Below, in pieces: positions 1 to 32,700 of a stretch of 64,000 bases of DNA (positions are counted from its first letter, which is position 1; every line of letters begins with the position of its first letter). The position numbers were made by a program, and so were the translations under genes. Under the pieces are notes generated by a model. That model made no database searches. It had not been told where the DNA came from and saw only the letters and a list, made by a program, of their open reading frames with translations. This DNA comes from Octopus bimaculoides (lineage: Eukaryota). The DNA lies in contig NC_069007.1 in assembly GCF_001194135.2 (NCBI RefSeq), positions 3,740,225 to 3,804,224 on the forward strand, in the 5' to 3' direction.

Positions 1-314
1 TAGCTTATGTCAACTTGCTTCTAATCCTTACTTCTTTGGGTGTTTTATTAGATTTGAAAACAAAATTACAACCCAATTATATCCTAATACTGCTAGAACT
101 GAATTATTGCAAAGAAAATCAGTTTCAGTTAGTAAATTTTCGACAATTTATGCATACCACTTCTTATCATGACAAAATGGTGTTTATTGTAGGAGAATAT
201 GAAAATGAATGAGGAAAATGCTAATAAAAACACAGGGAGAGGAGTGGGGAGGCGAAGAAATATGAAGATAGGCAAATTAATAGAGGCTAGTTAGTTAAGG
301 TGGAATACAGAATG

Positions 315-516
315 CTAGAAACTCTGGGTATATTTTTTAAAAGAGGTGGGTAAAAATGAATAATAAACAGAATGTTTACTGATAAAATGTCATTTGTCTT
401 CAATCCTTGCTTTTATCTCTTCATTATTTACCAAATAGATTTCATGATACAGCTAGCTGTAAGGTATGCAGTGCCATCTCAGAACTGCACAAAATTCCAT
501 AATACAGAAGAGAAAA
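315..516. repeat. arm 1 of a ~200-bp inverted duplication (partner 23709-23909)
   Basis: Five substitutions and one indel by hand alignment. Confidence 0.95.
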
Positions 517-3465
517 CTAAATTCCCCATTATATATAATATATAAAAAAAACGGTATGGCTTTCATCCCAACCATGTGGTCTCAAGTTCAGTCCCACCAT
601 GTGGTACCTTGGGCAAGTGTCTACTATAGTCCCAGGCAGACCAATACCTCATGAATGGATTTGGTAGACAGAAATCGAAAAAGCCCATCATGTGGCGGGG
701 AGAGAGTACACTTGTCTCAACATCATGTGATGGCCATAAACAAGCGTCACCATCACACAAGTTATGTTGTTTGTTTACAGAGTTCCATGAAAACCATGTC
801 TGGCCATGGAGGAAATACTACTTTGCTTGAAAACAGGTGAGGGTGACAGGAAGGGCATCCAGCTGTAGAAAACCGGCTTCAACAAATTCCATCTGACCCA
901 TGCAACCACGCATGTGTGTGTGTGTGTAAGTGTATGTGTGTATATATGTGCATACACATACAAGCAGACACTAATTATGAATCCAGGTAGAAGACAAAAA
1001 TATAATAAGCAGAGCACTAAAAAGGGACCAGAGAGATTGTAGCAGCATGAGTGTTTAGTCTTTGAAACCAAGTCAGGTTTTATACATTGGTGCATAATCC
1101 CTATTAGTACTTGAAGCTGAGAGAGAGAGCTTTTGATAATGAGGGAGATATTTTTGTCTGCCTATCAACGGTTACAACAGTAAGGTTAAGATATTAATAA
1201 AGGTAGAAACTAGATGACAGGTATTAATAGATTGAGAGCTGAAGTAATAACTGCAACAGTTACACAAGATGGAATCCTGTACACACAGGCTGTTTGTTTG
1301 GTTACATACCAAACATCTAAGGGTGCACCTTTGAGGTCACACAATCTGCTAAAAATAGCAGTGAAATATCCCACAACTCCCACCCAGCTGTGTTTGAGTA
1401 AAATAGATAGGATGCTCACATTTATAACACGTTTAATGATAGGGTTGCTTGATTTAAGACTCACTGTGGCAGGGGGCGGGGAGGTTCAACAACAACAAAT
1501 ATATTTTCGTATGTTGAGCGGTTCAGGTATCTAAAACAACATAACTATATAGAGTCACCCTTGTTGGTGTGACATGAAGGAATGAAAATTATCTGAAAGT
1601 TTAGGGCAGAACCCTGTTACTACTGTTTTATAACTGAACTGAGGTGGGGAGAGGCGCTTCAAGGGGTCAATCTACTTGCTAGAAATAGCAGCAAAATCTC
1701 TGACTATCTTAAAACAAAAATACACTGGATAAAGAGTTGTAGGTAGTTATCGCAGCTGATCTCGGGGGCTAAGCAACAAGGTTCTTCATTCAAATGATCA
1801 GATTAGCTGCCAGGTTTCTTTATGCAGGGCAGGCATAAATGTCACTTTAGCCTGAGTAGCATCCATGTGCAGTTATGACAAGACAAATGCAAAATTGCAT
1901 GCATGCACACAAGTGCACACACACACACAAAGCAAAAGCCACCAAGGGAACTACATCAGTGACAAATTTGAAGTATTTTAGGTTTGGGACAAGACTTGAA
2001 AGTTAACGTTCTTTCAAGAACTCTTTTTTTTTAAATTGCTTAATTAAAAAAAAATTTCATTAATACTAATTAATATTAATGATTTTTTTTCCTTTTAAAT
2101 ATTTGAAACAAGATTTTGGTTTTGTACATTTTACAACAACCAAGCTGCATGTTTAGTCTATTATACTGACCCCAGTTTCTTGTTTGGTACTCATTTTATA
2201 AGCCCCCATAAAGGGAGTCAAGCAAAGTTAACCTAGGAGTAAAGGGATCTAACAGCAGTATAATAGCATACTAGGTTTATCCCAAGGCAATGTGTGTGTG
2301 TATGCATACATATATAGTATATAGTATATATATAATAAAAGGGGTAAAGACCTCCCCCCGCTCAAACATTAATGACCATGGGACTACACATAGGAAGTTC
2401 CCCTCCAAGGCACAAGTCCAGGCAAGGTTGTTTATGGAAGACCAGCAGTTTCCCATACCACTGATACTATCCGAGGGAAAGACAAAGGCTGATGCAGCTT
2501 GGCACCAGCAATGTTGCAACTCATTAACTGAAGCAATGTGAAATAAAGTGTCTTGCTCAAGAATACAACACACAACCCAGTCTGGGAATCAAACTCACAA
2601 CCTCATGATTGTAAGCTCAACACTGCAACCAATGAGCCATGTGCTTTTACATATACATATATATATATATATATATATAATATAATAATATTAATATAAT
2701 AGATACACATACACATGTATACAAAACTTCCATGCTTCCTGAAATTCACCAATAATACACCTGATGTCTGCCACCTATTTTTTTGAAACAACTCATTCAC
2801 TGTTCACTGCCTGTTCATTATTCCATGTATTATTCCATGCACTTTTGGCTACTTTTTCTAAAGAGTCATAGTGCAGCACCCTAAGCACGGTATACCCCAA
2901 GTTCGTTATTATTTTTTACACGCACACATATGCACATGCACAAATACACTTCTTACTAGTGAAGAAGTATTCTCGGTACTATAATAAATAGACCCTCTTC
3001 TTTATTGGGAACTTCCCCACTTCTCAAATCAAAACATACATGTACACACACTCACTCTTTCTTCACCCACCCCCCTCTCTCTCACAAAAATTTCCACTAT
3101 TGTCTAATTCTGCTCAGCAGTCAATTAATAGCAGGTAGAAAGATTTTTCAGAAAACTATTTACTAAAAGCAATCAATTACTTCCCAGTTTAAAGAGGGAA
3201 ATTTTCAGTCCATATTCTAAATTTATTGGACATAAAGTAATCCTTTATCTAATAAATACCTAATTTAAGACATTATTTTAAACTTCCATGCTTCCTGAAA
3301 TTCACCAACTGTACACCCGATGCCCCATTCCCCCATTTTTTTTTACTGTTCATTTACATTCCATGTTGTAGTGCACCTGAGCACTGCATGTTTCTAAAAC
3401 AAATTAAGTTCTTGATCATGTTCCTCGTTAAAGAAGCCAAATACAATGATAACCAATAATGATAA

Positions 3466-3517
<52 letters not shown>

Positions 3518-4116
3518 GTTTCCTAAATGAAGTTTATTAGTCTTAATCAAATAATTAAAAATTTAATTTTATCCTAAATAAAATTTATCTGTCATTAACA
3601 GAACTGAAAAATTTTGTATGACTTAATCATGAATTCATTAGTTTAAAATATATTGAAAATCATTAATTAGCATTACTTAATCCCAAAAGACAAAAAAAAA
3701 AAAAATTATATATATATATATATATACAGAGGATAATTTCAACAAAAATATAAATAACATCACAGGTTTTCAATTTTATTTTTAAATTAAAAAAAAAAAT
3801 TCATGTACAGCTTAAGACTGATTCTATAAAATAGATATAATTTTAATAGCCTTTTTTTTTGTTAACCTAATGGAAACATTATACCATATTTTTAGTAAGA
3901 TTAACTAGTAAGATTAACTAGTAATGTTTCTAAAGAAAGGAGTTAGCTGGTATCAGTATAATTCTGCTTTTAATCACGTTACCTCTATTACTAAACCATA
4001 ATTCTTTTTTTTTTTAATACTATTAATAACTAACTTTAACTAAAGAATCTGAAAGGACTAAAACAATCACGTTTCGTAGCATAACTTGATAGATATTTGT
4101 TTTCTTTTCAACTTAC

Positions 4117-4141
4117 CTCCATAAGATCTTGGTGATACTTG
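4117..4141 (-). CDS. boule: boule exon 7 (25-nt microexon): QVSPRSYG + 1 nt
   Basis: Very strong acceptor cttattttattttttctttccttttcag and donor GAG|gtaagt; KQ-QVSPRS resembles vertebrate KQQVGIPRS. Confidence 0.8.
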
Positions 4142-4557
4142 CTGAAAAGGAAAGAAAAAAATAAAATAAGTGGTTTTGTTGTTGAAAAGAATCCATCAAC
4201 TTAATTTACTTATAGGGAGAAACAGAGACAAATTAAAATCCTGGCTTTAATAATGTTCATGTGTCATAAAATGGAGAGGAACACAATTGAAGACCATCTT
4301 ATGTCAGTCTAACAGAACCTCTGTAATTCCAAGACATTCCTCATGGAACAATTCAACTCAGTATTGTGAACCTAACAACAGATTCATAAAGTTGACAGTG
4401 TTGCCATTTCCTTACATTAATGAAGTATACAACTTGGGGGGGGGGGATGCACATAGCTAGGTTGGACTGTGTCGTTAATAAAATTACTTTTGAGCCATGA
4501 ACACATCACAGCAGCAGAGGCAGTAAAAACCTTCAGACTTACAACCCCATGGCTGCA

Positions 4558-4619
<62 letters not shown>

Positions 4620-4897
4620 TGAAAGCCAAGTACCTGGGGTTTCAACTCCATATTTCAATATAATTTTTGAAAGCTTTCATATATATATTTAGTGATGCAG
4701 GAATTAACAACACATGATAAAAGATGTCTTACCTCTGCAGCTCCCTGAGCATAAAGATCTGCAAGTAATTGTGTCGTCATATGAACCTATGAATTTAACA
4801 AAAAAAATTATCGTTAATTGAACTGATTCATAAAGCTCCTTATTCAATCAACATATTACAAAAGCAGAAAAATGCATGCAAAGACACACACACACGT

Positions 4898-4937
<40 letters not shown>

Positions 4938-7900
4938 TAGAAGGAAGTAGAAAGAATATTTTGTAAATATCGTAAGAATTCTCTTTTGTTGTGGATCTTA
5001 CAGAAGATAAAGATATAAATAACAGGGGTAAGCACTGAGTAACAAAATTCTTTGAATGTTGCCCATGGAACACAAATGCACATCTCCTGTGACGTGGTGA
5101 TAATATTTCTTTGTGCAAGAGATTAACTAAATCCTGCATCCAAGGATAAGTACTGACCCCGTGTCACTTGTGCCAAACCAACACAAATAAAAGAATGGGA
5201 CTGGCTCAGCACAAAAACCATGCCCACTAAAATGATATCATTACACAGGTTATTCAGCAAACCAAGAAACCACTAAGCAACAAAAGAGTTCTCACAGACA
5301 CAGTCCTTCTACATCAACAGTCAACCATCAGATCATATTTGAAAACCATTTTTACAAAACTTAGAAAGGAGATTTATTTTCACAATAAAATAAAATCAAG
5401 GACTTTGAGTCAGCACCTGTTTTCTAATGGCTGGTCCAATATTTAGTTTTCTGTCTTTGAAAATTAAATTTTCAGCCTGAAGAAAAAGAAAATAAGAAAA
5501 TAAAACATACATTTATTGATGCAAATCAGTTCGTTCAAGATTAAGATAAAAAGAAAGAGAAAGATTCAAGCTGATAAATAATCTGTTGGATTAAAAATTC
5601 TATTAAAAAAAAAAAAGGCTGCTGTTTTCTTTTCTTACATATTGCCATTGAGAATGTAATGTGATGTTTTATTGGAACATTCAAAGATTTACAAGAAAAA
5701 AAGGAAAATGAAATATACATTTTTTTTTCCTTTCATATAGTTTTCTGTGATAGCAACACATGGATTGATGTATAAATCTAGAATATTTTTCTTTTACTTT
5801 TGTGTGTCTGAAGAGGAAAGGATGTTCTGATCACTCCGGAAAATAAAAAGGGTGACCAGATAAACTGGGTGCAATGTAGAATGTCAGTGTAAATGCTGGA
5901 ACACAAAAGACACAGATCTAAAAGACAACCATTTGTACAAAAGAACCAACTGCTTGTTCTAATAGCTGAGCAGTTGAGCAAAACATGTAGGAACCTTTAC
6001 ATGATTATTAGAGCTGTTTACAAATTAACAGTCGAATCTCCATCAAATTACTATACCCTTACCATCTTCAAAAGGGGAAGTCACAGTAATGGAGAGATTA
6101 TAGTTTGATCCCCACTGATTGAAAGTTTACACATAATCACTTTTGTGGTGACTTGTGTGCCTAAATGACCCCCAAGAGCTATGCCAGCAAAGTGAAAGCT
6201 TCTAGTAGGGCCTGCTCCCATGCTGGACAAGTCAATGAATAGCCTATGCCAGACTAATAAGGATCTATCACTCCCCATAGGTACAAAATGGGTTTGTGCA
6301 GGGTTGATACCCTACCAAGGAAGAAGGCAAAGTTACAGAAGCTTCTCTGACAATTCAAAGCCAACAAGACTTAAGAGAGGGAGGCCTTCTCTAAGGGAAA
6401 GACAGTGCAGAGTTGAGAACAGTGGAGAAAAGTCATTGGTAGCCTATGCTGCACAGGGAGTGAGGCGTTTAAGTAGTCAAGATTGACTGGAGACTAAACA
6501 ATAGTCAAGTAAAAACTAATAGCAGTTAGGTAAATCGATGGTAACAATTCTATAGACAGGTTTACATCACAAACGTAAAGCATTTAGCAACCACACCCTA
6601 AAAACACGTAACATCTTTTCATGTATCCTTATACTCTACACCTGTAAACAACATTTTTTGTTTACAATAATTCTTAAACATTTACTTTTAACCCTGCAGT
6701 CACAAAAAGTATTATCTGTATCCCCACCTTATTATACTGTTTCCCATCTTTCCTAATTAGCTTTTTTAGTGTTGGGATTGGATTTCATTTGAGTCGCTTC
6801 CCTTTGCATATTAAGATGTCCTACGTTTACTCTCTTCTCTTATGTTTGTTCTGTTTGGTGTTAATAGAGCAGCGTTTATACTATATAATCTGGTATAAAT
6901 TTTTACTAGATACAGAATGACCAATTCCAATGAGCCTAGGGTTAATAATATCACAGTATCTATTTTCCCTTCAAAGAGACACCTGTCCATCACAAGGTTT
7001 ACTCATTTACAGCTGAACGGACTGAAACAACATCGCCCAGTTTAGGAATCAAAACAATGATTTTACGATTGTGTTTAATCACTTCTCGTGCAACTAGCTG
7101 TAAGTAAGTACCACAATATAACTTGCAATATTTCACATTCCCAGGGTAGCAAGCTGGCAGAATCTTTAGCACACCAGTGAAAATGCTTAGCAGTATTCTG
7201 TCTGTCTTTATGTCCCGAGTTCAAATTCTGCCGAGGTTGACTTTGCCTTTCATCTTTTCCGTATTGATAAAAATAAGTAACAGTGAAACACTGGGGTCAA
7301 TGTAACTGACTTACCCCGCTAGCCACAAAGTTGCTGGCCTTGTGCCAAATTTTGAAACCGATATTCTATCTATTCCATCCCAACTTGTGTGTCTAAAGCT
7401 TGGAGACTCATCTATTACATGGAAGATAAGCTAATAATAACAGTGCCTTATATGTGATGCTGTTATGTTCAATGAAAGCATAACCAGACAAGCCAGAGGT
7501 TCGGTAACAAGAAGAGATCAACAAACTGAGCAACATGAACCTGGGATGCTAAAATAATACAGCTGTGGGTATGTAATATGTATCAATATTATTGTTATTG
7601 TTTCGTCCTTGGCAAGATCTATGCATACAAAGCACTCTCCTCTTTTAGTTTTCACATATATTGTATTTATGACAATGTGTCCTTTATTTATCAAAATATT
7701 TTTTTTTAGGGAGATTTGGCTGCTATTACTAGCAGGTCAAGTGAGATGCTCCTGTTTCACCTCACAGGCATAACATTTTGGCAAGATGGTGAATAGCAAA
7801 ATGTTATATTTCAGCTTAAAAGATGCGATGAAATAGGGAGTGGCAACTGGAGTAACGCTGCTGTACACACCTAACGAACCCATGCCAGTATGGAAAACAT

Positions 7901-10344
7901 TAAACAGATGATGCTAACATGGAGGTGATGGCAAGGTTCTCTTGCTTTACTACTGTCACACTGTTCCACTTCTAAAACCTATGAACCAAGCCTTTCTTTC
8001 CCCCAACCCCCAACTGCAAGTGCAAGTGCAACACGTATAAGTATTAAGAGGAAGGCAACTAGATGAAACTAGATGAAACTACACATCTATGTCAAGTAAC
8101 AAAAACAAAACAAATCAACATTTCATGAAAGAAAACCAAGTTAGTTATCTGGCACCAAAAAAACACACATTAACTTTTATGTTCATCAAACAAATGACTG
8201 TTCATAAAACATGATTGATCTGTGAGAGAGTGTACTAGAAATGTCCTCATAAGTATACACACACACACACACACACTCAGTAAAATGAATTTCCACCAGT
8301 TTCTTCTGGAGAATTCAGTTTTTCAATCAATTAAAACTACTTACTCTATGTATCATAGTGAAAGTGAATCTTCTTTTATTTGTTTCAGTCACCGGACTGT
8401 GGCCATGCTGGGGCACTGCCCTGAAGGTCTTAGTCGAACAAATCAACCCCAGTACTTGTTTTTTAAGTCTTAGCACTTATTCTATTGGTCAATTTTGCTG
8501 CTACGTTATGGGTGTGTAAACAAACCTACACTGGTTATCAGGCGGTGGTGAGGAACAAAGATATACACATCTACACATGCGCACGTGTAACAAACTTCTA
8601 TCAGTTTCCTGTCTATCAAATTCACTTGTGTGCCCAGGGTCTAATAATGGTGCAGTGCAGTGGGATCCAAAACAACGTGATTGCAATGGGAGCTGCTTAG
8701 CTGCCCCAGCCAAGCCTGCCCGAGTATTCCACAAGCATTTACACTTTAATGTAATTCTCAGATAGAATTAGTGTAACATGGCTGGCCCTTTCAATTACAA
8801 GTGCAGTCCATTCAACAGGGTTTTTCAAGTTTCTATCGACTTAATTTCACTCACAATGGTTAGGTCATGGCAAAATGGTGAAAGTGGGATCAAACTCGAA
8901 ATCTCATAACGAACTTTCTTAACCACTTAAGTCATGTCTTCAGCCATTTACTTTACAACTATTTGGTATCGTTGATTCTATGCTGACTTATTTGACATCA
9001 GACATTTTAAAAATTCTCTTAGGACAGCCATTGCTATTGATAATTAGGTCCCCAAAATATGCATGCAACACACACACACACACACACACTGATAAATGCT
9101 AATTTAAGTAAAACAAAATAAAACCCTCGATAGGAAACTAATTCTATAATATGCAATGTATAAATGTAATAGATCGATTATTCTACAGCAAACACACAGA
9201 AACTGTACTATTAAATTCACTCTTTATACCACTTATAGCCAGTACAGCCACTCTTAAACATTACCAACGCTTCTACATTAGCAATCTCTCACCTACTTCT
9301 CATTGGTTAACACATTTTGTTTCAAAAGCACTTTGAAGCCTTAACTGATTCTTCTTTTTTATGACCTAGAGGAGAAAGGGCAACTCTTACGATTACTTTT
9401 TTATGGATTTCTAAGACTGCAGGAATTGAATGCTTGCAACAGAGTGGACACCACAAAAGACATGAAGGGACAAATATCTGTATCATCCAAGAACAGAGAC
9501 AGTCCCTCTCAACCTGAGACTGTAAGTAGAAGAAAACTCGCTACAGATACTTTACAGTAGGACTGAATCTAAAACTACATTGAGGTGAAGCTAACGCTTT
9601 AGTCGCACAGCCATGCATGCCAGTTGACAAGATCTTGGACTGAAAAAAAAATCTGCACTGAAAAAAACAAACCAGCTGCTAAAATTGTTTAGACACTAAG
9701 TCCAAGACAGTATGAATGTGAGCTAAACAAGAATTTAACACTTTTTTAGAATAGAAAATTTATCCAAAGGATGCTTCATGAGTTTAACTCGAAATCATAT
9801 TATCATCTAAATTTAACTCCAATTTAATTAATGATCCATTAAGAATAGTTCTATAAAATGCCTGGGCAAAAAAATTTACCTGAAAAAAATCTGAAAGTGA
9901 TGAAATAATCCTGAAGTTGAATGATTACATCAATATATCAGTAGTGGAGTTGTTACTGTTAGAATTGGGATCTGTGCTGCCGGTCGTCTTGTGCAACTTT
10001 TATATTTCATGAAGAAGAAGGTCAATAACAATTTCAGGGGTAGGGATCAGTCAATTGCATCACCCTCAATGCTCAACTGAAACTTATTTCATCAACCTCA
10101 AACTCATCAAGGAAAAGCAATAAATCAACCTTGACGAATTCACCTAACCCGACTTCGGATGAAATGCCACTAGGCATTCCTGGAAAGGAATGAGTGAACA
10201 ATGAATTTGGTCCTGACATGTCTGTATATGAGAGAGAGTGGGGGGAGAGGGAAGATAGGTAAGTAGGTACACAGGAAATGGAGGAAGAGAAAGAAGAAGA
10301 GACAAGGAGAGAAAGAGGAAAGGGAAGGAAAGTCAGAGATGAAG

Positions 10345-10386
<42 letters not shown>

Positions 10387-10827
10387 NNNNNNNNNNNNNN
10401 NNNNNNNNNNNNNNNNNNNNNNNNNNNNNNNNNNNNNNNNNNNNNNNNNNNNNNNNNNNNNNNNNNNNNNNNNNNNNNNNNNNNNNNNNNNNNNNNNNNN
10501 NNNNNNNNNNNNNNNNNNNNNNNNNNNNNNNNNNNNNNNNNNNNNNNNNNNNNNNNNNNNNNNNNNNNNNNNNNNNNNNTGGTATTTGACTCTTTACCAA
10601 AGAAAACAATATTTTTTTTTTCTATACTAAATATCATTTAATATGCAAGCTAATTAAATTATCTTTATAAGGAGTTTACATGCTTAAAAAAAAGGAAGTA
10701 TTTTTTTTTTTCTTTTCTGAAAACATCTCAGCTATTTTCAACTTCTGTTTATATTCCCCCACACACCCATAACCCATTCACTATACAAGAGAGAGAGAAA
10801 GACTGTGTGTGTGTGTGTGTGTGTGTA

Positions 10828-10888
<61 letters not shown>

Positions 10889-13800
10889 ACAGGTTCAAAG
10901 TGAAATGAAATGTTATTTGGTTACTGTCATGATTCTATCAATGAAATAAGTAACCAAACGAAAGTGAAAGTGTTCCAATTGCAAATTGAAACTAAATTGC
11001 ATAATATGCATCTATATCTAAGGCAGCTATAACAGATTTACTTATTTCCTGGTTGTTTTAACTTATACTGCTCACCATTAAACTAAGCTTTCCCAACACA
11101 AACAAGGAATAATAATCTGTTCATCTTCTCCACCCACTACTTGTAGGAGGCTTTTAGGGGTGGAGTCCTCAGGCACCTTCTCCATAGGGTCCTATCAGAA
11201 GCAGCTGTCATTAGACTTTCTGGCTGGATTCCAAAGTGCAACCAACTGAGACTATGGATATTATCCAACCATTTTGTTCTTCGTCTATCCCTAAATCGCC
11301 CGCTGGTTGGCTCAGCTTGAAGAATCTGTCTTGCGATTCTTTCTTGTGACATTTTAATCACATGTTTTACAGCACTAGGGCTGTGATCTCTCAATGCAGA
11401 GAAGTAGGAGCTGGGCCTGGCGAAACCCTCTGATCCCTGAGCTACATCCTTAGAGCACCAGTCTTATATTTGCTAAATCTACAATTTAGATATATATAAC
11501 ACTAAACATACTGTGGTAAGCACCAAGGAGATTTTAAGGAGCAGCATCTAGTTCTGGTTTCATGGAATTCAGTATCTTTTATCGTTTACTTGTTTCACTC
11601 ATTATCCTGTGGCCATGCTGGGGCACTGCCTGAAAGGGGTTTAGCTAAATGAACCGACTCCAGCTTGGGATTTATTCTATCACTCTCTTGCCAAACCAAT
11701 AATTTATGGGGACATAAACAAACCAGCATTAGTTGTTAAACAGTAATGGAAGACAAAGACAAACGCACACACAAAATGATGGGCTTCCACACAGTCTCCG
11801 TCTATTAAATTCACTAACAAGGCATTAGTCAATCTGGGGCTACAGAAGAAGACACTTGTCCAAGGTGTCATGCAGTAAGGCTGAACCTGGAAGCATGTGG
11901 CTGGAAAGCCAACTTCCTACCACACAGCCATGCCTGTGTCAATCCCAGTTATCATCTCAGTCTGCTTTGTCACTGGAGATAGATTCTGAGATTGAACTAG
12001 GTGATATGGTAACGCAGGGCTGACAGACAAGTGTCATGAGAATAAAGTAGGGAATAAACCAATTTCCCCACAAAGACAATAAATAAAGCACATGTAGTGG
12101 ATTTATATTCTTGATGTATAATCAAGTAGATCAATACTTTACTAGTCCACCATCTCACTTCTATATCTCTGTTCAAACAACATATACACACTCATTTCAC
12201 ATTTATCTACAGCACTCACGCTTTCTTATATATATATATTATTTTATTTTTAAATAGTTATTATGATAAAACTGAAATTAGTCAACAACAGCGAAATGTT
12301 ATTGAGGAAGGATAGCCATCCATCTATGTAAGAAACATCTGTCAACTTAAAACTGTTTACTAATTGCAAATTAACCATTTCAGTCATTTGTAGTTAATGA
12401 ATTAGTCAGATGTTTCTATTAAAATTAGTCAAAAAAAAAAAAAAATTGGTGATATCATTTTTTAATCAATAGAAAAATATTTTTTTTCTACATATATATG
12501 TATATAATTTTTTTTCAGAAAGGAGTATCTGGTACATATTTTATCTTCAAAAATAAATACTTGATGAAATTATATCAAGATGTATATACGATGGAGTATC
12601 ATTAACTGAAATGGCAGGAAGTAGAGTAACACTTGCAATCCTAATAAAATGATATCAAGTTAATAAATCAGAAACAGTAAAATGTTTAGTTTTAAATGTG
12701 GATTGCAATAATTAAATTATCAGCAAAAAAAAAAAAAAAATTAAATTGAAATTAAAATGCTCAAAGATAGTAAATTACAACCAAAGCACTAAAAATTAAA
12801 CTTAAAACAAAATTCTAACAAAAATTGAAAGAATACTTTTTGTTTAATAAGTGTTTGAAGCCTTAAGCATTTTTCCATAATTATGGAAAATGAGAAATTT
12901 TTCTAGTAAGACAGCATTAGTTTTGTTTTACTAATAATTTTTATTATTTTTTTTTAAATGCTCCTAAACTTATTAACATCTCTGGACCTTCTCAGCCTCA
13001 TCTTCAGGATAAAATCATCATAATGGTGCTTGTATTGCCACATTTTTGTAGTAGGCAGCAAGCATCAATGGAATGATGCAATGGCAAAAATCATCATCAC
13101 CAGATTTAAATTAACTTTTAAAATTTGTTAAGTATTCCCACTATTGCTGTGTGTTGATGTTTGTTTGGTAGTTTTTGCTATTTAATAAAGAATCCACAGC
13201 TAATTCCATAAATATATCAGATAGATAGACTGGTAGTGTTAACAAAATCATATTTCTCTATTTAGTTTTGTTTTCTATTCTATAATGGCAATGTGCTGTG
13301 TCTCCCAATAAATACAAATATATATACACACACACTTTACAACATGAGTGTTTAATTTCTATTATGTATAGATATATGAGAATGCTTGTCACAGATAAAT
13401 ATATATGTGAATGTGTATTTTTTTTTTTTTTTTTTGTTGGTCTTTTCCTTTTAAAAACTTTCCTTAGTCTGTTACTGGATTCCTTATGTCTATATTGAAC
13501 CGTATCTCTATCTAGTCATAAGTCCAGGAACAAAATTTGCTTCGGAGGCAAATTTTTCAGGGGGATATTTTCAAAGCGTTTTCGTTGCCCCACCAAAATT
13601 TTAAGGTGGTGTGCTCGCATTCCCTCTTCCTAAGCCTATGTATCTAGTCGATCAATGGAGACTCTATAAATATAACCAACATAAAGAATGCTTCTGCAAT
13701 AGTACTTAAAGCGATATGCATATGTATGCACATGTACACGTTACATATTTACATGTATATATATACATATATAAAATACATGCATACTTTACATAGAAAT

Positions 13801-23000: not shown

Positions 23001-24287
23001 ACAACATGTCATTAATCTTCCTTGGGGACAGTGACAATGAATATGCAACAATGAAAGGGTTTAAACACACTATTTAAACAACATCTCGTTCTCATTATCT
23101 AATTAGATATCTTCAAGGTTTCAGCCCATTAAAGGAAGTACCACTCCACCTAAATGTCAGCAACACATACACACACAAAAAAAGAAACCAATGTAACACT
23201 TTGGGAATATACAAACAGAATTTGTATGCAAAACAAAATGAAAATCAAAAGCTTTATAATATCCACTTTGTAGCTGCTTGGTCAAATATCTTTTTATCTT
23301 TGACTTGTTTCAGTCATTAGACTGCGGCCATGCTGGAGCACTGGCTTCAAGAAATTTTAGTTGAATTGAATGAACTGACCCCAGTTCTAAGCCTCTTACG
23401 CACTTTACTGATCTCTATTACTGAACCACTAAGTTACAGGGATGTAACCACACCAACACTAGTTGCCAAGTAGCAGTGGAGCGACAAACGCATACACGCA
23501 CAACAGACGTCTTTCAGTTTCTTTCTACCAAATCCGCTCACAAGGCTTTGGTCAGCCCATGGTTAGAGTAGAAAACACTTTGCCCAAGGTGCTGCACAGT
23601 GTGACTGAACCCAAAACCACATGGTTTATACAGAAAGTTACTTTCTGTATAAAATCTGTAAAGTAGGAATCTTCAGGTGTTAAGAAGACAGTCTAATAAC
23701 TAAACTAATTTTCTCTCCTGTATTATGAAACTTTGTGCAGTTCTGAGATGGCACTGCATACCTTACAGCTAGCTGTATCATGAAATTTACTTGGTAAATA
23801 ATGAAGAGATAAAAGCAAGGATTGAAGACAAATGACATTTTATCAGTAAACATTCTGTTTATTATTCATTTTTACCCACCTCTTTAAAAAATATACCCAG
23901 AGTTTCTAGTGGGACTGAACCCGGAACCATGTGGTTGGAATGCAAACTTATTACCACATAGCCATGCCTGTGCCTATCTTCATTGTTTTATCACTAAAAG
24001 TTAGTACCACTCTGATCTGACAGGACCAAATTTCAAACTGCTTAGAAACACATACAGAAAAACTGGTAAGAGATAAAATGAAAGTTGAAAACTTAAAATG
24101 AAATTAATATGTATGCATATATGTGCAGGTGTATGTGCACGTTTGTGTAATTATTACACATTCCAGTTTTAAAAATTAGAGAACCAATTTAATGTAAAGT
24201 ACTCAATACATAAAAGTAGTGTATAAATAGTCATTTCTTTCACTTTAGAATGAGAACATTCAAATAAGGGAAAGCCATGTGTTTGCT

Positions 24288-27015: not shown

Positions 27016-29750
27016 CATATATATATATATATACACATATATATGTATGTATGTGTGTGTGTATGTATCTCTTTCAGGTGCAAGTATGGTAAGCACCAGC
27101 CGGAATGAACACACAGGAATACATTTATGTCTTCAGAAAAGGATTCAATAGCTCTTGTGAGCTATTTAAAAAGACCTATATTTCACATTAGTCATAGCAC
27201 TATGAAAACACGCAACCAAATCAAAACATTACTAAATCAAGAAATGTTTAATGCTGTAACCACAGCCTAATTTAAATGATTATATATTTTGGTTTTCCAC
27301 TACCACTGTCATATTAGCATCATGGGAAGGAAAGGGGTGGGGGCAAAAATGTCTGTTTTAGTCATATTTTCTCTCATCATTATCTTTATTTTGGAAAACG
27401 TATCTCATGCTACGTATATTGTTTATATATTTTCTAGTGCCAACTCCTGATGGCTACTGAATGCCATGAGATTTCTCACACCATATAACCCATCTGTTGT
27501 GTTTCTGAATTATCATACCAAATAAACATTAATCATTCTGATGATACCAACCAGCCCCAGATTCCATGATGTACCAACCACTCTCTTTGAAAGTGTTCAA
27601 ATCCAAATTAAAATATTTCATCAGAAATTTTCATTATGTTCAAAAATCGGCTTACTAACCAAACAAATTTATTTTACTGAATACCAACAAATTATTATCA
27701 TTTAAAACATATGGTCACAAAAAGTTTACTCCTGAGAGACAACATTTATCATTCCTGAGGATTTTCAATAGGTCTATTTTGTTACTATATATATATATAT
27801 ATATATCATTTAACGTCCACCTTTCATGCTAACATGAGTGGGACGGTTTCACAAGAGCTGGCCAGGCAGAAGCCTGCACCAGACTTCTGTGACTGTTTTG
27901 GGAGAATTTTGACAGCTGGATGCCCTTCCTAACACCAACCACTCAGCAGGGTGAACTTAGTGCATTTTACGTGGCTCAAGCACAGGCGAGGTCAGTTTTG
28001 GCAAGGTTTTTTACAGCTGGATGTCCTTCTGAACACCGAACATTTTACAGTGTGGACTGGATGCTTTTAAGAAGCACCTGCACAGGGTCACCAAGTACTT
28101 GGATGACAAGACAAAAAAAAAAAAAAAAACTTTCAAGAAGGGAGGGGACATTGGAAGAGGCAATCCTGTGTTGGATGATGAAAGGTTAAAGTGTGACAAA
28201 GAGACAGAAACAGGTGTCTTGCTGTAGAGGAAGTACAAGGTTACCCAGCCAGAGAGAGATCAGGAATGATAACAGAAACAGGTGTGATATATATATAAGG
28301 GTTAAGACCCCCCTTTGGTCATGAAAGACCATGAGACTGCAGCTAGAAAGTTCCCTTCCTAGGAACAAGTCCAGGCAAGATTGTTTACAGAAGACCAGCA
28401 GTTGACCATGCATACCAGCCTCCCCTCTCTACACCACTGATGTTATCCAAGGGAAAGGCAAAGGGGCCGATACAGCTTGGCACCTGGGATGTTGCAACTC
28501 ATTGCAACAGATGAGTGAACAGGAGCAATGTGAAATAAAGTGTCTTGCTCAAGAACGCAACACAACAGCCTGGTCCAAGAATCCAACTCACAACCTCATG
28601 ATTGTGAGCCCATGATTGTGAGTTCCTTCCAAGCACTGCTGTAAGCAGCGGAAGTGAGCTAGAATGTTAAAACTTAGTGCACATGTACACCAGAGCTCAA
28701 GGTCAATTTTTACCAAGCAGCTTTCCTCTGCGTGCTTTAGCTTCGTTACTATGGCAACAGTCCGGATACTTATTGATCTGACCTCATATATATATATATA
28801 TATATATAATGTATATATAATTATATTACATAATATATGTAAGTCAATTCAGCTAATTTCCCCCTTTTCTTTAAACAATTACCAAATTGAATGTTGGAAA
28901 AGAAATCTTACCGTTGTGGTAATTCCGCCAACAAATATCCTGTTTGGTATCACAGTTCCGTATTTTGGTGCCTGAGTACTTATCGGAGTACCAACGGGAG
29001 TAGGACATGGTGAAACATCAGAAGAGGACTGCAAAAAATAAATAAATAAATAGAGTTAATTCCTTTCTTCATGAAAAAAAGACGGATTCTTCTTTTACTC
29101 TTGTCTGTTGAAAATCTTTTGTAGACAAGCAAGAGTATTGCATATCTTTCAAAGTAACGTTCACCATTGTATACTGGCCATTAAGTATGCAATATGCAAG
29201 ACAAAATGCAATGCTATTTTCCTGATTAGTTTGCGTAATTAATAACTAGCACAATCCTTTGACCTTTTAGTGGTTAATGACCAGCAGAAGCATTCAGGTT
29301 TTATTTGCAGAAATGTTTTTTAAAAGAACTTTCCAACTCCTAATAGCAGTTTCATGTGATGAGAATCAATTCTTCATTCAAAAAAGAAAACATTCTTTAA
29401 ATAATTAAACCAGGAACATATTTCTTAGATATAAAGGAGTTATACTCCTATTTTAAGCTAATAACACCTAGCTGTTAGAACTAAGTATCAATTTGTTATT
29501 CAGGTAAAACTTTGACATGCATCTGCTTACCATCACAAAACCTGAGCCTTTTAGAGGACCAAATATACAATTATTTGGCCAAATCCCTTTTCAGACAAAT
29601 AATGTAAGCAAAACAATTTGACTAGTGACACAGAGCTTTCAGAATCCTCAATTATTTTTAACCTGTTGTTGAAGTTGCAGACAATGTAGTTTAAGGAGTT
29701 GCTTTTAGGCATTACTAGCGGTGAAACCTGGCACTGTCCAGGCATGCACA

Positions 29751-29793
<43 letters not shown>

Positions 29794-32700
29794 CTGCATA
29801 TGTGCCGGTATACATGCATGTGTGCTCAGTTTACTCAGCTGAAAATGAGTACCAGCCAACTGATGGTGCAGCTCATCCTTGCTCCAGCTGTCACAGCCTC
29901 TATGTTCTACGATATCAAGGGATGGAAGGGGCCAAGAGAGTGTTAATGTTTGTTTACGACTACATAGGTACCTAAAAGCAATTAACAAAAAGTATGATGC
30001 ATGCCACCAGGTTACAGGTTATGCCTGCTTGCAAGAGACAGCTAATTTTATATATATATATTATGTGTGTGTGTGTGTGTGTACACATATATATATATAA
30101 TACAGAGGTATACACAGAAGTACATCTCATTACCTGTCAAACAGATTAAAGCACTCAAACAAATCAATGTAACAATCATGTGCGCATACATACATGTTTA
30201 TACAGATATACATATCAATGAATGTGATGGGGGCTAAGTGGTTCATAGAAATGGCGATCATCATCATCATCATCGTCGTCGTTTAACGTCCACTTTCCAT
30301 GCTAGCATGGGTTGGACGATTTGACTGAGGACTGGTGAAACCAGATGGCTGCACCATGCTCCAATCTGATTTGGCAGATGTACATAAAAATGGGGTACAT
30401 ATGAAAAATGTGGTGCGTGCATGCATGCGAGCACACACACACACACACGTGTACATGCATACGTTCAGTGAATATGTGAAGCACAATGAAAAAAGATGAA
30501 ATATCCATATTTCAGAAATATCCATATTTCAGAAATCTAACATTAGAACCTTATTGTTTTCCTACATTTTTGATGTCACTGAGAATTGTCAGGGGTTCAG
30601 TGAAAAGTTGTTGAATGGTGCTATAAATGTAGGTAATTTATAAGATTATTAAAATCCTTCTTAAAGGAGTCAATACTACATAGGTAACTAATCTCTGTGT
30701 TCAAAGACTTCCTCGTTAACATTGTATGCATTGTATCAAAACAAAAAACCCGCATACACACAGTATCATTGTCTTAAGTTGCTATGCTTTATATTCACTC
30801 ACTTGAAATCTTTGATTTGAATATTTCAGTGGCCTCTGCTTCACTCAGAAACTCACTTTGTCAAGACCATGTCCATTATCAGATTCACTCCTAACTACAT
30901 GTCACAGCAAATATTTCAGAGTTGCCTCCCTTCGTTCTCCCTTCGAACCAGTAGTTAAAGTTAATTTAAATAAACTTTAAATAAACTTTTTTTAGCTAAC
31001 TACATTTAAGCATGTTAGCCTCCACATTGCTCTCTAACAACTTTTCTAGGATGAGTTATTTTCCCTTTTGCACACACACACGCACGACTGAGTAAATGCG
31101 TAAAAGTTAAAAAGAGCAACACCTAACAAAGCACCACATTTATCCCGTTTGATTTACATATTAAGATCATCCCGTTGCCATGATACAGTTATGTGAAAAG
31201 CTCGCCCAGTGAACTGATTCCACAAGTCACACCATCTCATTTGTTCTTTATGAGGCATTATACAAATAGTCATAAATCACCAGTGAACCAAGGACCTCCT
31301 GACAGTTCTGATTCCCAACATCAGCCAGGTTAATTTGTCAATAATATTATCAGTAAAGACGATAAGACATTACAATTTTTCATTTTGCCAGTCTTAAACT
31401 CTCCAAAACCTCACATAAACTTAATATAGAGGCTGATATATGGAAAATTTTACTATTTCTCATTAATTACTTTTTTGATATTTGTTAATCAGTGACATCT
31501 CATTGGTTTCTCCACTAAGTTATATCCATTTCTATTTGTTTTGCTTTTTTGTAAATTGCCAAACCATTATTAATTGGAGCTATGTAGGAGCTTTTTGATG
31601 ATAGCTGTAAGATTTTTAAGGGCTATGAACTATAAAGGTAATGCAGAAATATTGGATGAAATTTGAAAGCAGTGACAGAAACTCTTGCATGTGGTAAAAA
31701 TGTAAATGTTTACATTTCGGCTCAAGAAATCCAAATTATTTTTATAAGATGAGAAACCATATCTTCGAAACATGAAAGAGAGTTAAGAAAATATTGCGAT
31801 CACCACTGCTGTAGTCATTGCCGTCATCATCATCATCATCATCATCATCAGAATAATTTAATGTCCACCTTTCCATACTTGAATGGATCAAATAGAATTT
31901 GTTGGGGGCAGGTTTTCTATGGTCTGTTGCCCTTCCTGTTGCCAACCATCACCTGTTCCCAAGCAAGCTGATATTTCCCCATGGCCAGACATGCTTTTTG
32001 CGAAAGACTGGAAACAAATAACCTCGCTTGTATGAAGAGGGTGTACATTTACAACCATCGCATGATGTCTAAGCGAGGGCACACACACAAACACACACAA
32101 CAGGCTTCTTTCAGTGTCCTTCTACCAAGTCCACTTACAAGACATTTGCTCAAACTCTTGTGCCGTGAGACTGAACACACGACCAGACAATTGGCAAGCA
32201 AGCTTCTTTAACCACGCATCCACATCTGCATCTATGCCATGCCTGCCATAGACAAAACTTAATGTAATAATAAAGTAATGAAGAAAAACAGAAGAAAAAA
32301 AATGAACTACTAAACTATCTTGGAATTCAGTCATCAACAGTTAGCTATGCACACAAATTACTTTTTGAGAAATGATGCAACAAGTGAACAACAAACGCAT
32401 CAGCATAAAGTGGAAGCAATTACCAAAGGGGAGAGAGTAACAAGATGAAGACAACTAACCAACCAATTCAGGAATAGATTTGGTAAGTATTGGAAAAACC
32501 ACCAATTCTGAAATGTCTTTCTAACCATGCACAAAGGACAATGTTACAGAAAAGTTGGGATTTATAGGATTGCATTAAGCAGCTGTTGATAATTTCTTTG
32601 TTACAAAACTAAATAATTGTAAGTAATTATTATTAGACACATAATTATCTCATAGAAATGTAATAAATCACTGATGCCTAGATATCTGTATATTTTGCAA

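What the first reader, a model, noticed from the sequence alone, without database searches (positions are those of the whole stretch)
315..23909. A 200-bp inverted duplication brackets the boule RRM exons: candidate circular-Boule signal
Seen: 315-516 is the reverse complement of 23709-23909 (five substitutions, one indel, ~97%). I recognise no TE in it. One arm is 4.2 kb upstream of exon 3 and the other 3.6 kb downstream of the 25-nt exon, so on the minus-strand pre-mRNA they could pair and loop out exons 3-7 (289 nt, or 235 nt without the 54-nt exon). Four of the five substitutions would be G:U wobbles and one an A:C mismatch; that is too few to be significant. Established: intronic inverted repeats promote back-splicing. 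As I recall, circular Boule RNAs were reported in fly, mouse and human (mammalian circle named for exons 3-6) and linked to sperm heat-stress protection. Inference: this lineage may have gained its own cis element for an equivalent circle. The stem would also be a long ADAR substrate in a heavily editing lineage.
Basis: partly seen in the sequence, partly recalled or inferred. Interest (0 to 1): 0.8.

Follow-up and report, generated by a model that had tools for sequence, protein, structure and literature searches.

The report
Inverted 205-bp duplicate bracketing octopus boule exons
Two nearly identical 205-base copies in opposite orientation really do sit in the introns on either side of exons 3-7 of the Octopus bimaculoides boule fertility gene; they look like a young local duplication that could make the transcript form a circle, but nothing here shows that a circular RNA is made.

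Summary
Window 315-519 is the reverse complement of 23706-23909: 205-nt alignment, 96.6% identity, six transitions and one 1-nt indel, E about 1e-93.

The window is Octopus bimaculoides chromosome CM046627.1. The minus-strand gene is boule. I mapped exons 2-7 in the window and exon 8 about 25 kb beyond its start. One arm is therefore in intron 2, 4.2 kb upstream of exon 3. The other is in the 29-kb intron 7, 3.6 kb downstream of the 25-nt exon 7. The three assembly gaps are all intronic.

The block has only these two copies in 107 kb of the locus and shows no transposon hallmarks. The 81 nt abutting arm B is itself an inverted copy of a sequence 1.3 kb away. That favours a local templated duplication over chance transposon copies.

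On the pre-mRNA the arms would form a 204-bp duplex of about -336 kcal/mol, the strongest pairing between introns 2 and 7. This parallels mouse Boule, where deleting intron-2 repeats abolishes circEx3-5, 3-6 and 3-7.

Back-splicing, editing, selection, genome-wide copy number and conservation in other Octopus species could not be tested. Octopus circRNAs are reported to be few. Argonauta hians carries an unrelated inverted repeat in the same two introns.

The parts
315..519 (-). Arm A of the inverted pair. It lies in boule intron 7, 3598 nt downstream of the exon 7 donor. On the pre-mRNA it is the 3' arm.
   Evidence: intron 7 assignment from exon 8 at L002 89589-89714
23706..23909 (-). Arm B of the inverted pair. 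It lies in boule intron 2, 4209 nt upstream of the exon 3 acceptor. On the pre-mRNA it is the 5' arm.
23625..23705 (-). Segment X. These 81 nt directly abut arm B and are an inverted copy of 22258-22348. X ends in a perfect 12+12 palindrome.
   Evidence: 5 substitutions in 81 nt plus a 10-nt indel
22258..22348 (+). Partner (source or sister) copy of X, 1.3 kb from arm B in intron 2.
23908..23977 (-). 5' head of a copy of the abundant octopus SINE, truncated exactly at the edge of arm B.
23300..23626 (-). 5'-truncated SINE body starting exactly at the end of X. Block B plus X therefore sit inside SINE sequence.
553..700 (+). SINE copy 50 nt beyond arm A. It is only 74% identical to the SINE next to arm B, so it is an independent insertion.
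28912..29028 (-). boule exon 2 (117 nt), with AG/GT splice sites.
19406..19497 (-). boule exon 3 (92 nt), the predicted back-splice acceptor. An alternative acceptor at 19509 adds SPSQ.
18046..18103 (-). boule exon 4 (58 nt).
5417..5476 (-). boule exon 5 (60 nt; AENLIFKDRKLNIGPAIRKQ).
4733..4786 (-). boule exon 6 (54 nt; VHMTTQLLADLYAQGAAE).
4117..4141 (-). boule exon 7 (25-nt microexon), the predicted back-splice donor, GAG|GTAAGT.
30260..30378 (-). Intron-1 copy of a multi-copy SINE-like repeat. It is 93% complementary over 119 nt to a copy in intron 7 (L002 66282-66400, outside the window). This pair would bracket exons 2-7.
20219..20279 (.). Assembly gap in intron 2 between arm B and exon 3. 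The 4.2-kb distance is therefore an estimate.
10387..10579 (.). Assembly gap in intron 4.
15385..15671 (.). Assembly gap in intron 4.

Best explanation
The pair is a genuine, young inverted duplication of about 205 bp (about 3% diverged) that arose locally inside the Octopus bimaculoides boule gene. One copy is in intron 2 and the other in intron 7.

It most likely arose by a DNA-level templated, template-switching or repair-patch event. At the intron-2 site the block is fused directly to a second short inverted copy of another nearby intronic sequence, and the whole patch interrupts SINE sequence. Which arm is the original is not resolved.

As a by-product, the boule pre-mRNA can form an almost perfect 204-bp intramolecular duplex. 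That duplex loops out exons 3-7 and brings the exon 7 donor within about 7.8 kb of looped intron from the exon 3 acceptor. This is the canonical architecture that favours back-splicing (a circle of 289 or 301 nt) or exon skipping. It is also a textbook ADAR substrate.

Shown: the repeat, its intronic positions, its uniqueness at the locus, and its pairing energy. Inferred: local origin, duplex formation in vivo, some circle formation, and editing. I consider it most likely a neutral structural variant with incidental molecular effects, not a selected element.
For: Repeat and its statistics.

Host gene and exon map:
- The window is 100% identical to O. bimaculoides CM046627.1 (L002).
- Exons 2-7 are in the window and exon 8 is 25 kb beyond it, so both arms are intronic.

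Copy number and element features:
- The block has only two copies, and X only two, in 114 kb (107 kb of called bases).
- True TE families at the locus show many diverged copies.
- There is no TSD, TIR or pol III box, no Rfam hit and no self-structure.

Local origin:
- Arm B abuts X, an inverted copy of a sequence 1.3 kb away, with statistically indistinguishable divergence (6/204 vs 5/81, p=0.30).
- Junction microhomologies are 2, 0 and 2 nt.

Pairing:
- Duplex energy is -336 kcal/mol, net -269 relative to the folded single arms. This is far above every other intron 2 x intron 7 pair, which range from net -60 to -77.
- Each arm has no competing partner.
- Long flanking introns (9.4 and 29.3 kb) fit circRNA-prone architecture.

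Precedent: mouse Boule intron-2 repeat deletion abolishes the exon-3 circles (PMC7673749). Octopus editing concentrates in intronic and repeat hairpins (PMC9699675; PMC9068888).
Against: - No RNA data could be examined, so duplex formation, back-splicing and editing are all inference.
- Octopus circRNAs are few and expressed at low levels (PMC9699675).
- The arms are 3.6-4.2 kb from the splice sites and 23 kb apart, so intron 2 can be removed co-transcriptionally before arm A exists.
- Genome-wide copy number could not be measured. The public collections I could scan hold no octopus DNA: a SINE control 24-mer also gave zero hits. The bound from the locus itself is therefore weak, at most about one copy per 36 kb.
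- Details of the arm B mosaic are not fully explained by a single event. These are the 13-mer shared upstream of both arms and the 27-29 nt SINE overlap with 5 mismatches.
Confidence: 0.6

Rival explanations
1. Both arms are independent insertions of a moderately repeated, recently active short transposable element that neither the reader nor I recognise. Their inverted arrangement around exons 3-7 is then chance, as with Alu pairs.
For: - The two copies are coextensive at both ends, as expected for a complete short element.
- Octopus introns are packed with young repeats, and most elements are under 10% diverged (PMC9068888).
- Arm B lies in a nest of repeat fragments.
- The locus sample only bounds density to at most about 1 per 36 kb.
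- Another TE-derived pair, 93% over 119 nt, already spans introns 1 and 7.
Against: - There is no TSD, TIR, pol III box, tail or Helitron ends.
- Sensitive searches found no diverged or partial third copy in 107 kb, whereas real families show 5-20 copies there.
- The neighbouring segment X also has its only other copy within 1.3 kb, also inverted. This requires a second coincidence.
- My rough joint likelihood under dispersed families is at most about 1e-3 (an inference, not a tool result).
Confidence: 0.13
2. The inverted pair is a selected cis element. Octopods maintain a circBoule (exons 3-7) equivalent to the mammalian circEx3-x RNAs, and lineage-specific inverted repeats in introns 2 and 7 are recruited and retained to drive it.
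For: - The same intron pair is involved as in the mouse element, whose deletion abolishes circEx3-5/6/7 (PMC7673749).
- The predicted circle contains the exon homologous to mammalian exon 5.
- Five of six substitutions keep pairing as G:U on the sense strand only.
- Argonauta hians has an unrelated 330-nt, 84% inverted repeat with one arm 172 nt upstream of exon 3 and the other in intron 7, at -416 kcal/mol.
- The chance of such placement is about 0.22 and 0.10 in the two species.
Against: - The wobble bias is not significant (p=0.11).
- The two-species coincidence is post hoc, with a joint probability of only about 0.02.
- The octopus pair is young (3% diverged), so there has been little time for selection to leave a signal.
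- Other young local inverted duplicates exist at the same locus without any such rationale.
- circRNAs are generally scarce in octopus.
- No expression data are available.
Confidence: 0.1
3. One arm is an assembly artefact: a chimeric gap fill or misplaced repeat in the short-read-based, gap-rich O. bimaculoides assembly.
For: - The assembly has 14 gaps in this window.
- It contains suspicious near-perfect duplicates next to gaps: a 100% direct duplicate across the 10-N gap at 39203-39212 and a 99.3% palindrome around a gap in intron 7.
- Arm B is a mosaic with abrupt junctions.
Against: - The arms differ at 7 positions, and X differs from its partner at 5 positions plus a 10-nt indel. They are therefore not the same reads placed twice.
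- The nearest gaps are more than 3.4 kb from arm B and 9.8 kb from arm A.
- Junction overlaps of 0-2 nt are not what k-mer graph chimeras produce.
- Exon order and orientation in the contig pieces support the scaffold.
Confidence: 0.04

Closest known systems
Mouse Boule intron-2 reverse-complementary repeats that drive circEx3-5, circEx3-6 and circEx3-7 (Gao et al. 2020, Sci Adv, PMC7673749)
   Same: - The host gene is orthologous.
- One arm lies in intron 2, upstream of exon 3.
- The bracketed exons encode the C-terminal two thirds of the RRM and the segment just after it.
- The predicted circle starts at exon 3 and can end at exon 7.
   Different: - The octopus arms are unrelated in sequence to any mammalian repeat.
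- They appear to be a locus-specific duplicate and not genome-wide repeats.
- Circle formation, testis expression, HSP70 binding and any heat-stress role are all untested in octopus.
Inverted Alu (IRAlu) or reverse-complementary-match pairs in flanking introns that promote exon circularisation in animals (established knowledge; Ivanov et al. 2015, as cited in PMC9699675; title of PMC8330042)
   Same: - Complementary sequences sit in the two introns flanking the circularised exons.
- The flanking introns are long.
- Cross-intron pairing is stronger than any competing within-intron pairing for these arms.
- The same architecture is also expected to promote exon skipping and to attract ADAR.
   Different: - The pair is much closer to perfect (97% over 204 bp) than typical Alu pairs.
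- It lies further from the splice sites (3.6-4.2 kb).
- It is not derived from a recognisable transposon family.
Templated insertions and serial template switching (FoSTeS/MMBIR-type) that produce small inverted duplications (established knowledge)
   Same: - Two different nearby templates, 1.3 kb and 23 kb away, were both copied in inverted orientation.
- The two copies are joined directly.
- Junction microhomology is 0-2 nt.
- The patch is inserted into pre-existing sequence.
   Different: - Polarity cannot be shown without an outgroup.
- An extra shared 13-mer and a mismatched SINE overlap suggest either more steps or a different history.

Membership tests
Intronic complementary-sequence (RCM/IRAlu-type) circRNA locus | Reverse-complementary sequences in the introns on both sides of the circularised exons | tested here: met
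   The arms lie in intron 2 and intron 7 at 96.6% over 205 nt.
Intronic complementary-sequence (RCM/IRAlu-type) circRNA locus | Canonical acceptor and donor at the exons to be joined | tested here: met
   Exon 3 has an AG acceptor (two tandem acceptors). The exon 7 donor is GAG|GTAAGT.
Intronic complementary-sequence (RCM/IRAlu-type) circRNA locus | Cross-intron pairing not outcompeted by within-intron pairing of the same arms | tested here: met
   Each arm has a single partner in 107 kb. Net energy is -269 kcal/mol, against -60 to -77 for the other intron 2 x intron 7 pairs.
Intronic complementary-sequence (RCM/IRAlu-type) circRNA locus | Back-splice junction reads and RNase R resistance | not testable with these tools
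   No RNA-seq access. The supplements of PMC9699675 held as text do not list boule.
circBoule RNAs (Gao et al. 2020) | Host gene is the boule/BOLL orthologue | tested here: met
   The exons translate 100% to O. bimaculoides and O. vulgaris Boule. Identity to Boule from other phyla is 60-85%, with the RRM domain PF00076.
circBoule RNAs (Gao et al. 2020) | Circle made of RRM-region exons that include the exon-5 homologue carrying the HSP-binding motif | tested here: inconclusive
   The bracketed exons 3-7 include the AENLIFKDRKLNIGPAIRKQ exon, which aligns to human residues 92-112. The motif sequences are given only in figures, so they were not compared.
circBoule RNAs (Gao et al. 2020) | Gonad expression of the circle and interaction with HSP70-family proteins | not testable with these tools
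   Needs RNA and protein experiments.
Transposable element copy (SINE, MITE or Helitron) | Target-site duplication, terminal inverted repeats, pol III boxes with a tail, or Helitron termini | tested here: not met
   The flanks and ends show none of these. CTAG|T fits a Helitron 3' end at arm B only, and there is no hairpin.
Transposable element copy (SINE, MITE or Helitron) | Many dispersed copies with a spread of divergence | tested here: inconclusive
   There are two copies and no fragments in 107 kb. The whole genome was not searchable: the control scan shows the collections lack octopus DNA.
ADAR hyper-editing substrate | Long (over 100 bp) near-perfect intramolecular dsRNA in a transcribed region | tested here: met
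   The predicted duplex is 204 bp with one bulge and one A:C, in introns of an annotated gene.
ADAR hyper-editing substrate | Clustered A-to-G mismatches in RNA reads | not testable with these tools
   No RNA-seq access.
Templated insertion / template-switch duplication | Inserted segments copy nearby sequences, with several templates abutting | tested here: met
   The block (partner 23 kb away) and X (partner 1.3 kb away) are fused at 23705/23706, and both are inverted.
Templated insertion / template-switch duplication | Microhomology at junctions, and absence of the insertion in an outgroup | tested here: inconclusive
   Junction microhomology is 2, 0 and 2 nt. O. sinensis and O. vulgaris DNA was not retrievable. 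Argonauta is too diverged to align.

The most novel reading that the evidence does not exclude
Octopods make a circBoule from exons 3-7, as mammals do. The cis elements that drive it turn over: O. bimaculoides uses a young locus-specific 205-bp inverted duplicate, while Argonauta hians uses an unrelated 330-bp inverted repeat in the same two introns. This would extend a conserved germline circRNA to Lophotrochozoa and show recurrent re-invention of its biogenesis signal in a lineage where heavy ADAR activity otherwise suppresses circRNAs.
Probability: 0.12. Interest if true: 0.7.

Novelty: new member of a known kind. Interest (0 to 1): 0.35.

Why it matters
circBoule is one of the few circRNAs with a demonstrated organismal function: it protects male fertility under heat stress in fly and mouse. 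It is claimed to be ancient, but it has only been seen in an insect and in vertebrates.

An octopus locus with a near-perfect complementary pair around the same exons gives a sharp, cheap test of that claim in a third major animal clade. Public gonad RNA-seq can be searched for two specific junctions.

Cephalopods edit double-stranded RNA heavily, so the locus also offers a defined 204-bp stem on which to measure the proposed antagonism between ADAR and back-splicing.

If no circle is found, the pair is simply one more young local duplication in a repeat-rich intron.

Tried and rejected
1. Copy number by protein look-up. The 57-aa ORFs inside each arm, and two ORFs at or near the junctions, are not on record. 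A homologue search with the arm ORF found nothing. These negatives say little, because genomic octopus ORFs do not seem to be in the collection.

2. Copy number by DNA scan. A 24-mer from the arm gave 0 hits in metagenome contigs. A control 24-mer from the abundant octopus SINE also gave 0, so that collection holds no octopus DNA and the negative is uninformative.

3. Finding octopod Boule. The first Boule search returned only proteins of 203 aa or less and no octopus entry. I suspected a length filter and padded the 117 real residues with 170 random residues. That search returned octopod Boule proteins. The filler is artificial and was used only to pass the filter.

4. Orthologous loci. The O. 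sinensis and O. vulgaris gene ranges are 123 and 173 kb, so no DNA is served. Non-longest isoforms are not on record. The cross-species test of both arms therefore could not be done. Argonauta hians was retrieved, but its introns do not align to Octopus.

5. The block as a structured RNA or known RNA family. There is no Rfam hit, and a single arm folds no better than shuffles (z=+0.8).

6. Retro-copy of a spliced RNA joining the block to X. The block and X-partner are colinear, but there are no GT/AG or AT/AC signals at the would-be junctions on either strand (sequence inspection). Rejected.

7. A's upstream spacer as a degenerate SINE head, which would make head plus block a composite SINE. 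The local alignment is no better than shuffles. Rejected.

8. The 27-29 nt SINE overlap at arm B as a target-site duplication of the insertion. Five mismatches are too many for an event of about 3% age. Left unexplained.
Full report
**1. The observation**

Window 315-519 and 23706-23909 are reverse complements. The alignment is 205 nt at 96.6% identity with E 8.6e-94 (blastn; the repeat finder pair I25; MAFFT). Identity falls from about 97% to background within a few bases at both ends.

There are six substitutions, all transitions, and one 1-nt indel in an A/T run.

Sensitive searches (blastn word size 7, nhmmer) find no third copy in the window.

**2. What the locus is**

A recalled human BOLL sequence located RRM exons on the minus strand. 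Their translation hits Boule proteins across animals at 60-73% identity.

That first search returned nothing longer than 203 aa and nothing from octopus. I repeated it with the 117 real residues padded by 170 random residues. This returned Boule of Argonauta hians, Octopus bimaculoides and O. vulgaris. Cluster listings added O. sinensis and the longest isoforms.

The look-up of the longest O. bimaculoides isoform returned locus L002: GCA_001194135.2, CM046627.1:3690601-3804660. The window is 100% identical to L002 in reverse, with window x = L002 64437-x. The window is therefore O. bimaculoides, and L002 adds 50 kb beyond the window start.

**3. Exon map** (minus strand, all with AG/GT)

| Exon | Window coordinates | Size |
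|---|---|---|
| 2 | 29028-28912 | 117 nt |
| 3 | 19497-19406 | 92 nt; a second acceptor at 19509 adds SPSQ and is used in the RefSeq O. bimaculoides models, |
| 4 | 18103-18046 | 58 nt |
| 5 | 5476-5417 | 60 nt |
| 6 | 4786-4733 | 54 nt |
| 7 | 4141-4117 | 25 nt |
| 8 | L002 89589-89714 | 25.15 kb beyond the window start |

- Intron 2 is 9.4 kb and intron 7 is 29.3 kb.
- Arm B lies in intron 2, 4209 nt upstream of exon 3.
- Arm A lies in intron 7, 3598 nt downstream of exon 7.
- Exons 3-7 sum to 289 nt, or 301 nt with the upstream acceptor and 235 nt without exon 6.

**4. Assembly gaps**

The three flagged gaps are all intronic: two in intron 4 and one in intron 2. The contig pieces on either side carry boule exons in the right order and orientation. 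The arms' relative orientation is therefore not a scaffolding artefact. Piece 10580-15384 has no exon and is unverified.

The arms differ by 3%, and the nearest gap is more than 3.4 kb away, so a duplicated-read artefact is unlikely.

**5. Transposon or local duplicate?**

The abundant octopus SINE has at least 10 copies in the window at 70-88% identity. [quoted passage not shown] Another SINE-like family also shows several diverged copies at the locus.

The 205-nt block behaves differently:
- It has exactly two copies in 107 kb of called sequence.
- It has no partial or diverged relatives.
- It has no TSD, TIR, pol III boxes or tail.
- It has no Rfam family and no self-structure.

The most informative result concerns the 81 nt directly abutting arm B (23625-23705, 'X'). 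X is itself an inverted copy of 22258-22348, only 1.3 kb away. It differs by 5 substitutions in 81 nt plus a 10-nt indel. That divergence is statistically indistinguishable from the block's 6 in 204 (p=0.30).

Block B plus X (286 nt) sit between a SINE 5' head (23908-23977) and a 5'-truncated SINE body (23300-23626). Junction microhomologies are 2, 0 and 2 nt.

So two different sequences each have their only other copy nearby in the same gene, both are inverted, and they are fused end to end. A templated, template-switch or repair-patch event explains this easily. Two dispersed families explain it poorly. This is an inference, and genome-wide copy number remains untested. The only scannable collections contain no octopus DNA, as the SINE control showed.

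Three details remain unexplained:
- A 13-mer, ATGAAGATAGGCA, occurs only twice in the window (expected 0.01). It lies 40 nt upstream of block A and 61 nt upstream of block B. In B its last 7 nt are the SINE start.
- The SINE sequences on the two sides of the patch overlap by 27-29 nt but differ at 5 positions.
- A SINE follows each arm in the same orientation, yet the two SINEs are only 74% alike.

Because of these details, I do not claim which arm is the original.

**6. What it would do**

On the sense pre-mRNA the arms co-fold into a 204-bp duplex at -336 kcal/mol. Net of the folded single arms this is -269 kcal/mol. The duplex has one bulge and one A:C.

It is the only inverted pair above 300 bits joining introns 2 and 7. 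The other seven such pairs are SINE-type, at 67-78% identity, with net energies of -60 to -77 for those folded. Neither arm has an alternative partner.

A second, TE-derived pair joins intron 1 (window 30260-30378) to intron 7 (L002 66282-66400). It spans 119 nt at 93% identity, with net energy -146. It would bracket exons 2-7.

Long flanking introns plus strong cross-intron complementarity is the established recipe for back-splicing, and the same pairing also promotes exon skipping (title of PMC8330042). The closest precedent is Boule itself. circBoule RNAs occur in fly, chicken, pig, mouse and human. CRISPR deletion of the reverse-complementary repeats in mouse intron 2 removed circEx3-5, 3-6 and 3-7 but left circEx2-6, circEx2-7 and the mRNA unchanged (PMC7673749).

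Three points count against confident prediction of a circle:
- Total-RNA profiling of 18 O. vulgaris tissues gave only 296 confident circRNAs at low levels. The authors attribute this to ADAR melting intronic duplexes (PMC9699675). boule does not appear in the supplements held as text.
- The arms are kilobases from the splice sites.
- Arm A is transcribed about 19 kb after exon 3, which gives linear splicing a head start. This last point is my inference.

Editing of the stem is likely on general grounds, because octopus editing concentrates in intronic and repeat hairpins. It was not observed here.

**7. A comparative hint**

The Argonauta hians boule locus (L001) has no homologue of the block or of X. 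It does have its own inverted repeat of 330 nt at 83.6% identity, with a dimer energy of -416 kcal/mol. One arm (16885-17196) lies 172 nt upstream of the exon 3 acceptor. The other (41284-41610) lies in the 23-kb intron 7.

Placing the five strongest inverted pairs of each locus at random gives a probability of about 0.10 (Argonauta) and 0.22 (O. bimaculoides) that at least one falls in this configuration. The joint probability is about 0.02. This is post hoc and only suggestive.

**8. Verdict**

The repeat is real, intronic, essentially unique at the locus and probably a young local duplication. It creates a circRNA-competent and ADAR-competent architecture around exons 3-7 of boule, which parallels the mouse element.

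Whether a circle is made, whether the stem is edited, and whether any of this is selected are all open. Each can be tested with public assemblies and gonad RNA-seq. I rate it as a new member of a known kind (a complementary-intron candidate circRNA locus) of moderate interest.

Noticed in passing
L001 16885-17196 and 41284-41610 (Argonauta hians boule): An inverted repeat unrelated to the octopus block: 330 nt, 83.6% identity, flanked by (TA)n. One arm is 172 nt upstream of exon 3 and the other is in intron 7. It has only two copies in the 75-kb locus. The intron pair is the same as in O. bimaculoides.
   Followed up: partly
window 30260-30378 with L002 66282-66400 (outside the window): A 119-nt, 93% complementary pair from a multi-copy SINE-like family with a (GAT)n tail. 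It joins intron 1 to intron 7 and would bracket exons 2-7. It is a possible competitor to the block pair, or the basis of a circEx2-7 analogue.
   Followed up: partly
window 19498-19509: Exon 3 has tandem acceptors 12 nt apart (AACAG| and CACAG|). The upstream one inserts SPSQ and is used in the RefSeq O. bimaculoides and some O. vulgaris and O. sinensis models. The downstream one is used in Argonauta, in two unnamed Logan-derived proteins (P0097, P0098) and in one O. vulgaris model.
   Followed up: partly
window 37089-37139, 38727-38777, 39250-39300: The alternative N-terminus of the O. vulgaris and O. sinensis Boule models (FPTTGYQVQSTAPHLGQ) maps at 88% to three places in intron 1 that overlap SINE-type repeat matches seen. 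It is either an exonised repeat or an annotation artefact.
   Followed up: no
window 38690-38937 and 39213-39460; 37007-37247 vs 38620-38858: A 248-nt direct duplicate at 100% identity sits immediately after the 10-N gap at 39203-39212, which suggests an assembly duplication. A 241-nt inverted pair at 97.9% lies 1.4 kb apart in intron 1. Young local duplicates, real or artefactual, are not rare at this locus.
   Followed up: partly
L002 86880-87158 and 87350-87628 (intron 7, outside the window): A 279-nt inverted repeat at 99.3% identity directly flanks a 163-N gap. It is probably an assembly artefact or an unresolved palindrome.
   Followed up: no
window 262-274 and 23971-23983: The 13-mer ATGAAGATAGGCA occurs only at these two places (expected 0.01), upstream of each arm. 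In arm B's flank its last 7 nt are the first bases of a SINE. This is unexplained and bears on which arm is the copy.
   Followed up: partly
window 23625-23653 and 22320-22348: Segment X ends in a perfect 12+12-nt palindrome, TATACAGAAAGT|ACTTTCTGTATA, in both copies. This is a possible hairpin at a template-switch point.
   Followed up: no
predicted circle (exons 3-7, 289 nt): The circle would carry AUG-initiated reading frames that cross the back-splice junction. One of 148 aa runs once around the circle and includes the RRM frame. Another of 61 aa starts at the Met of exon 6. This is purely a sequence observation.
   Followed up: no
window 43464-43835 and 49233-49606: A 376-nt inverted pair at 93% identity, about 5.4 kb apart, lies in intron 1 of the RefSeq O. 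bimaculoides model (annotated gene start about window 54436). It was not characterised.
   Followed up: no
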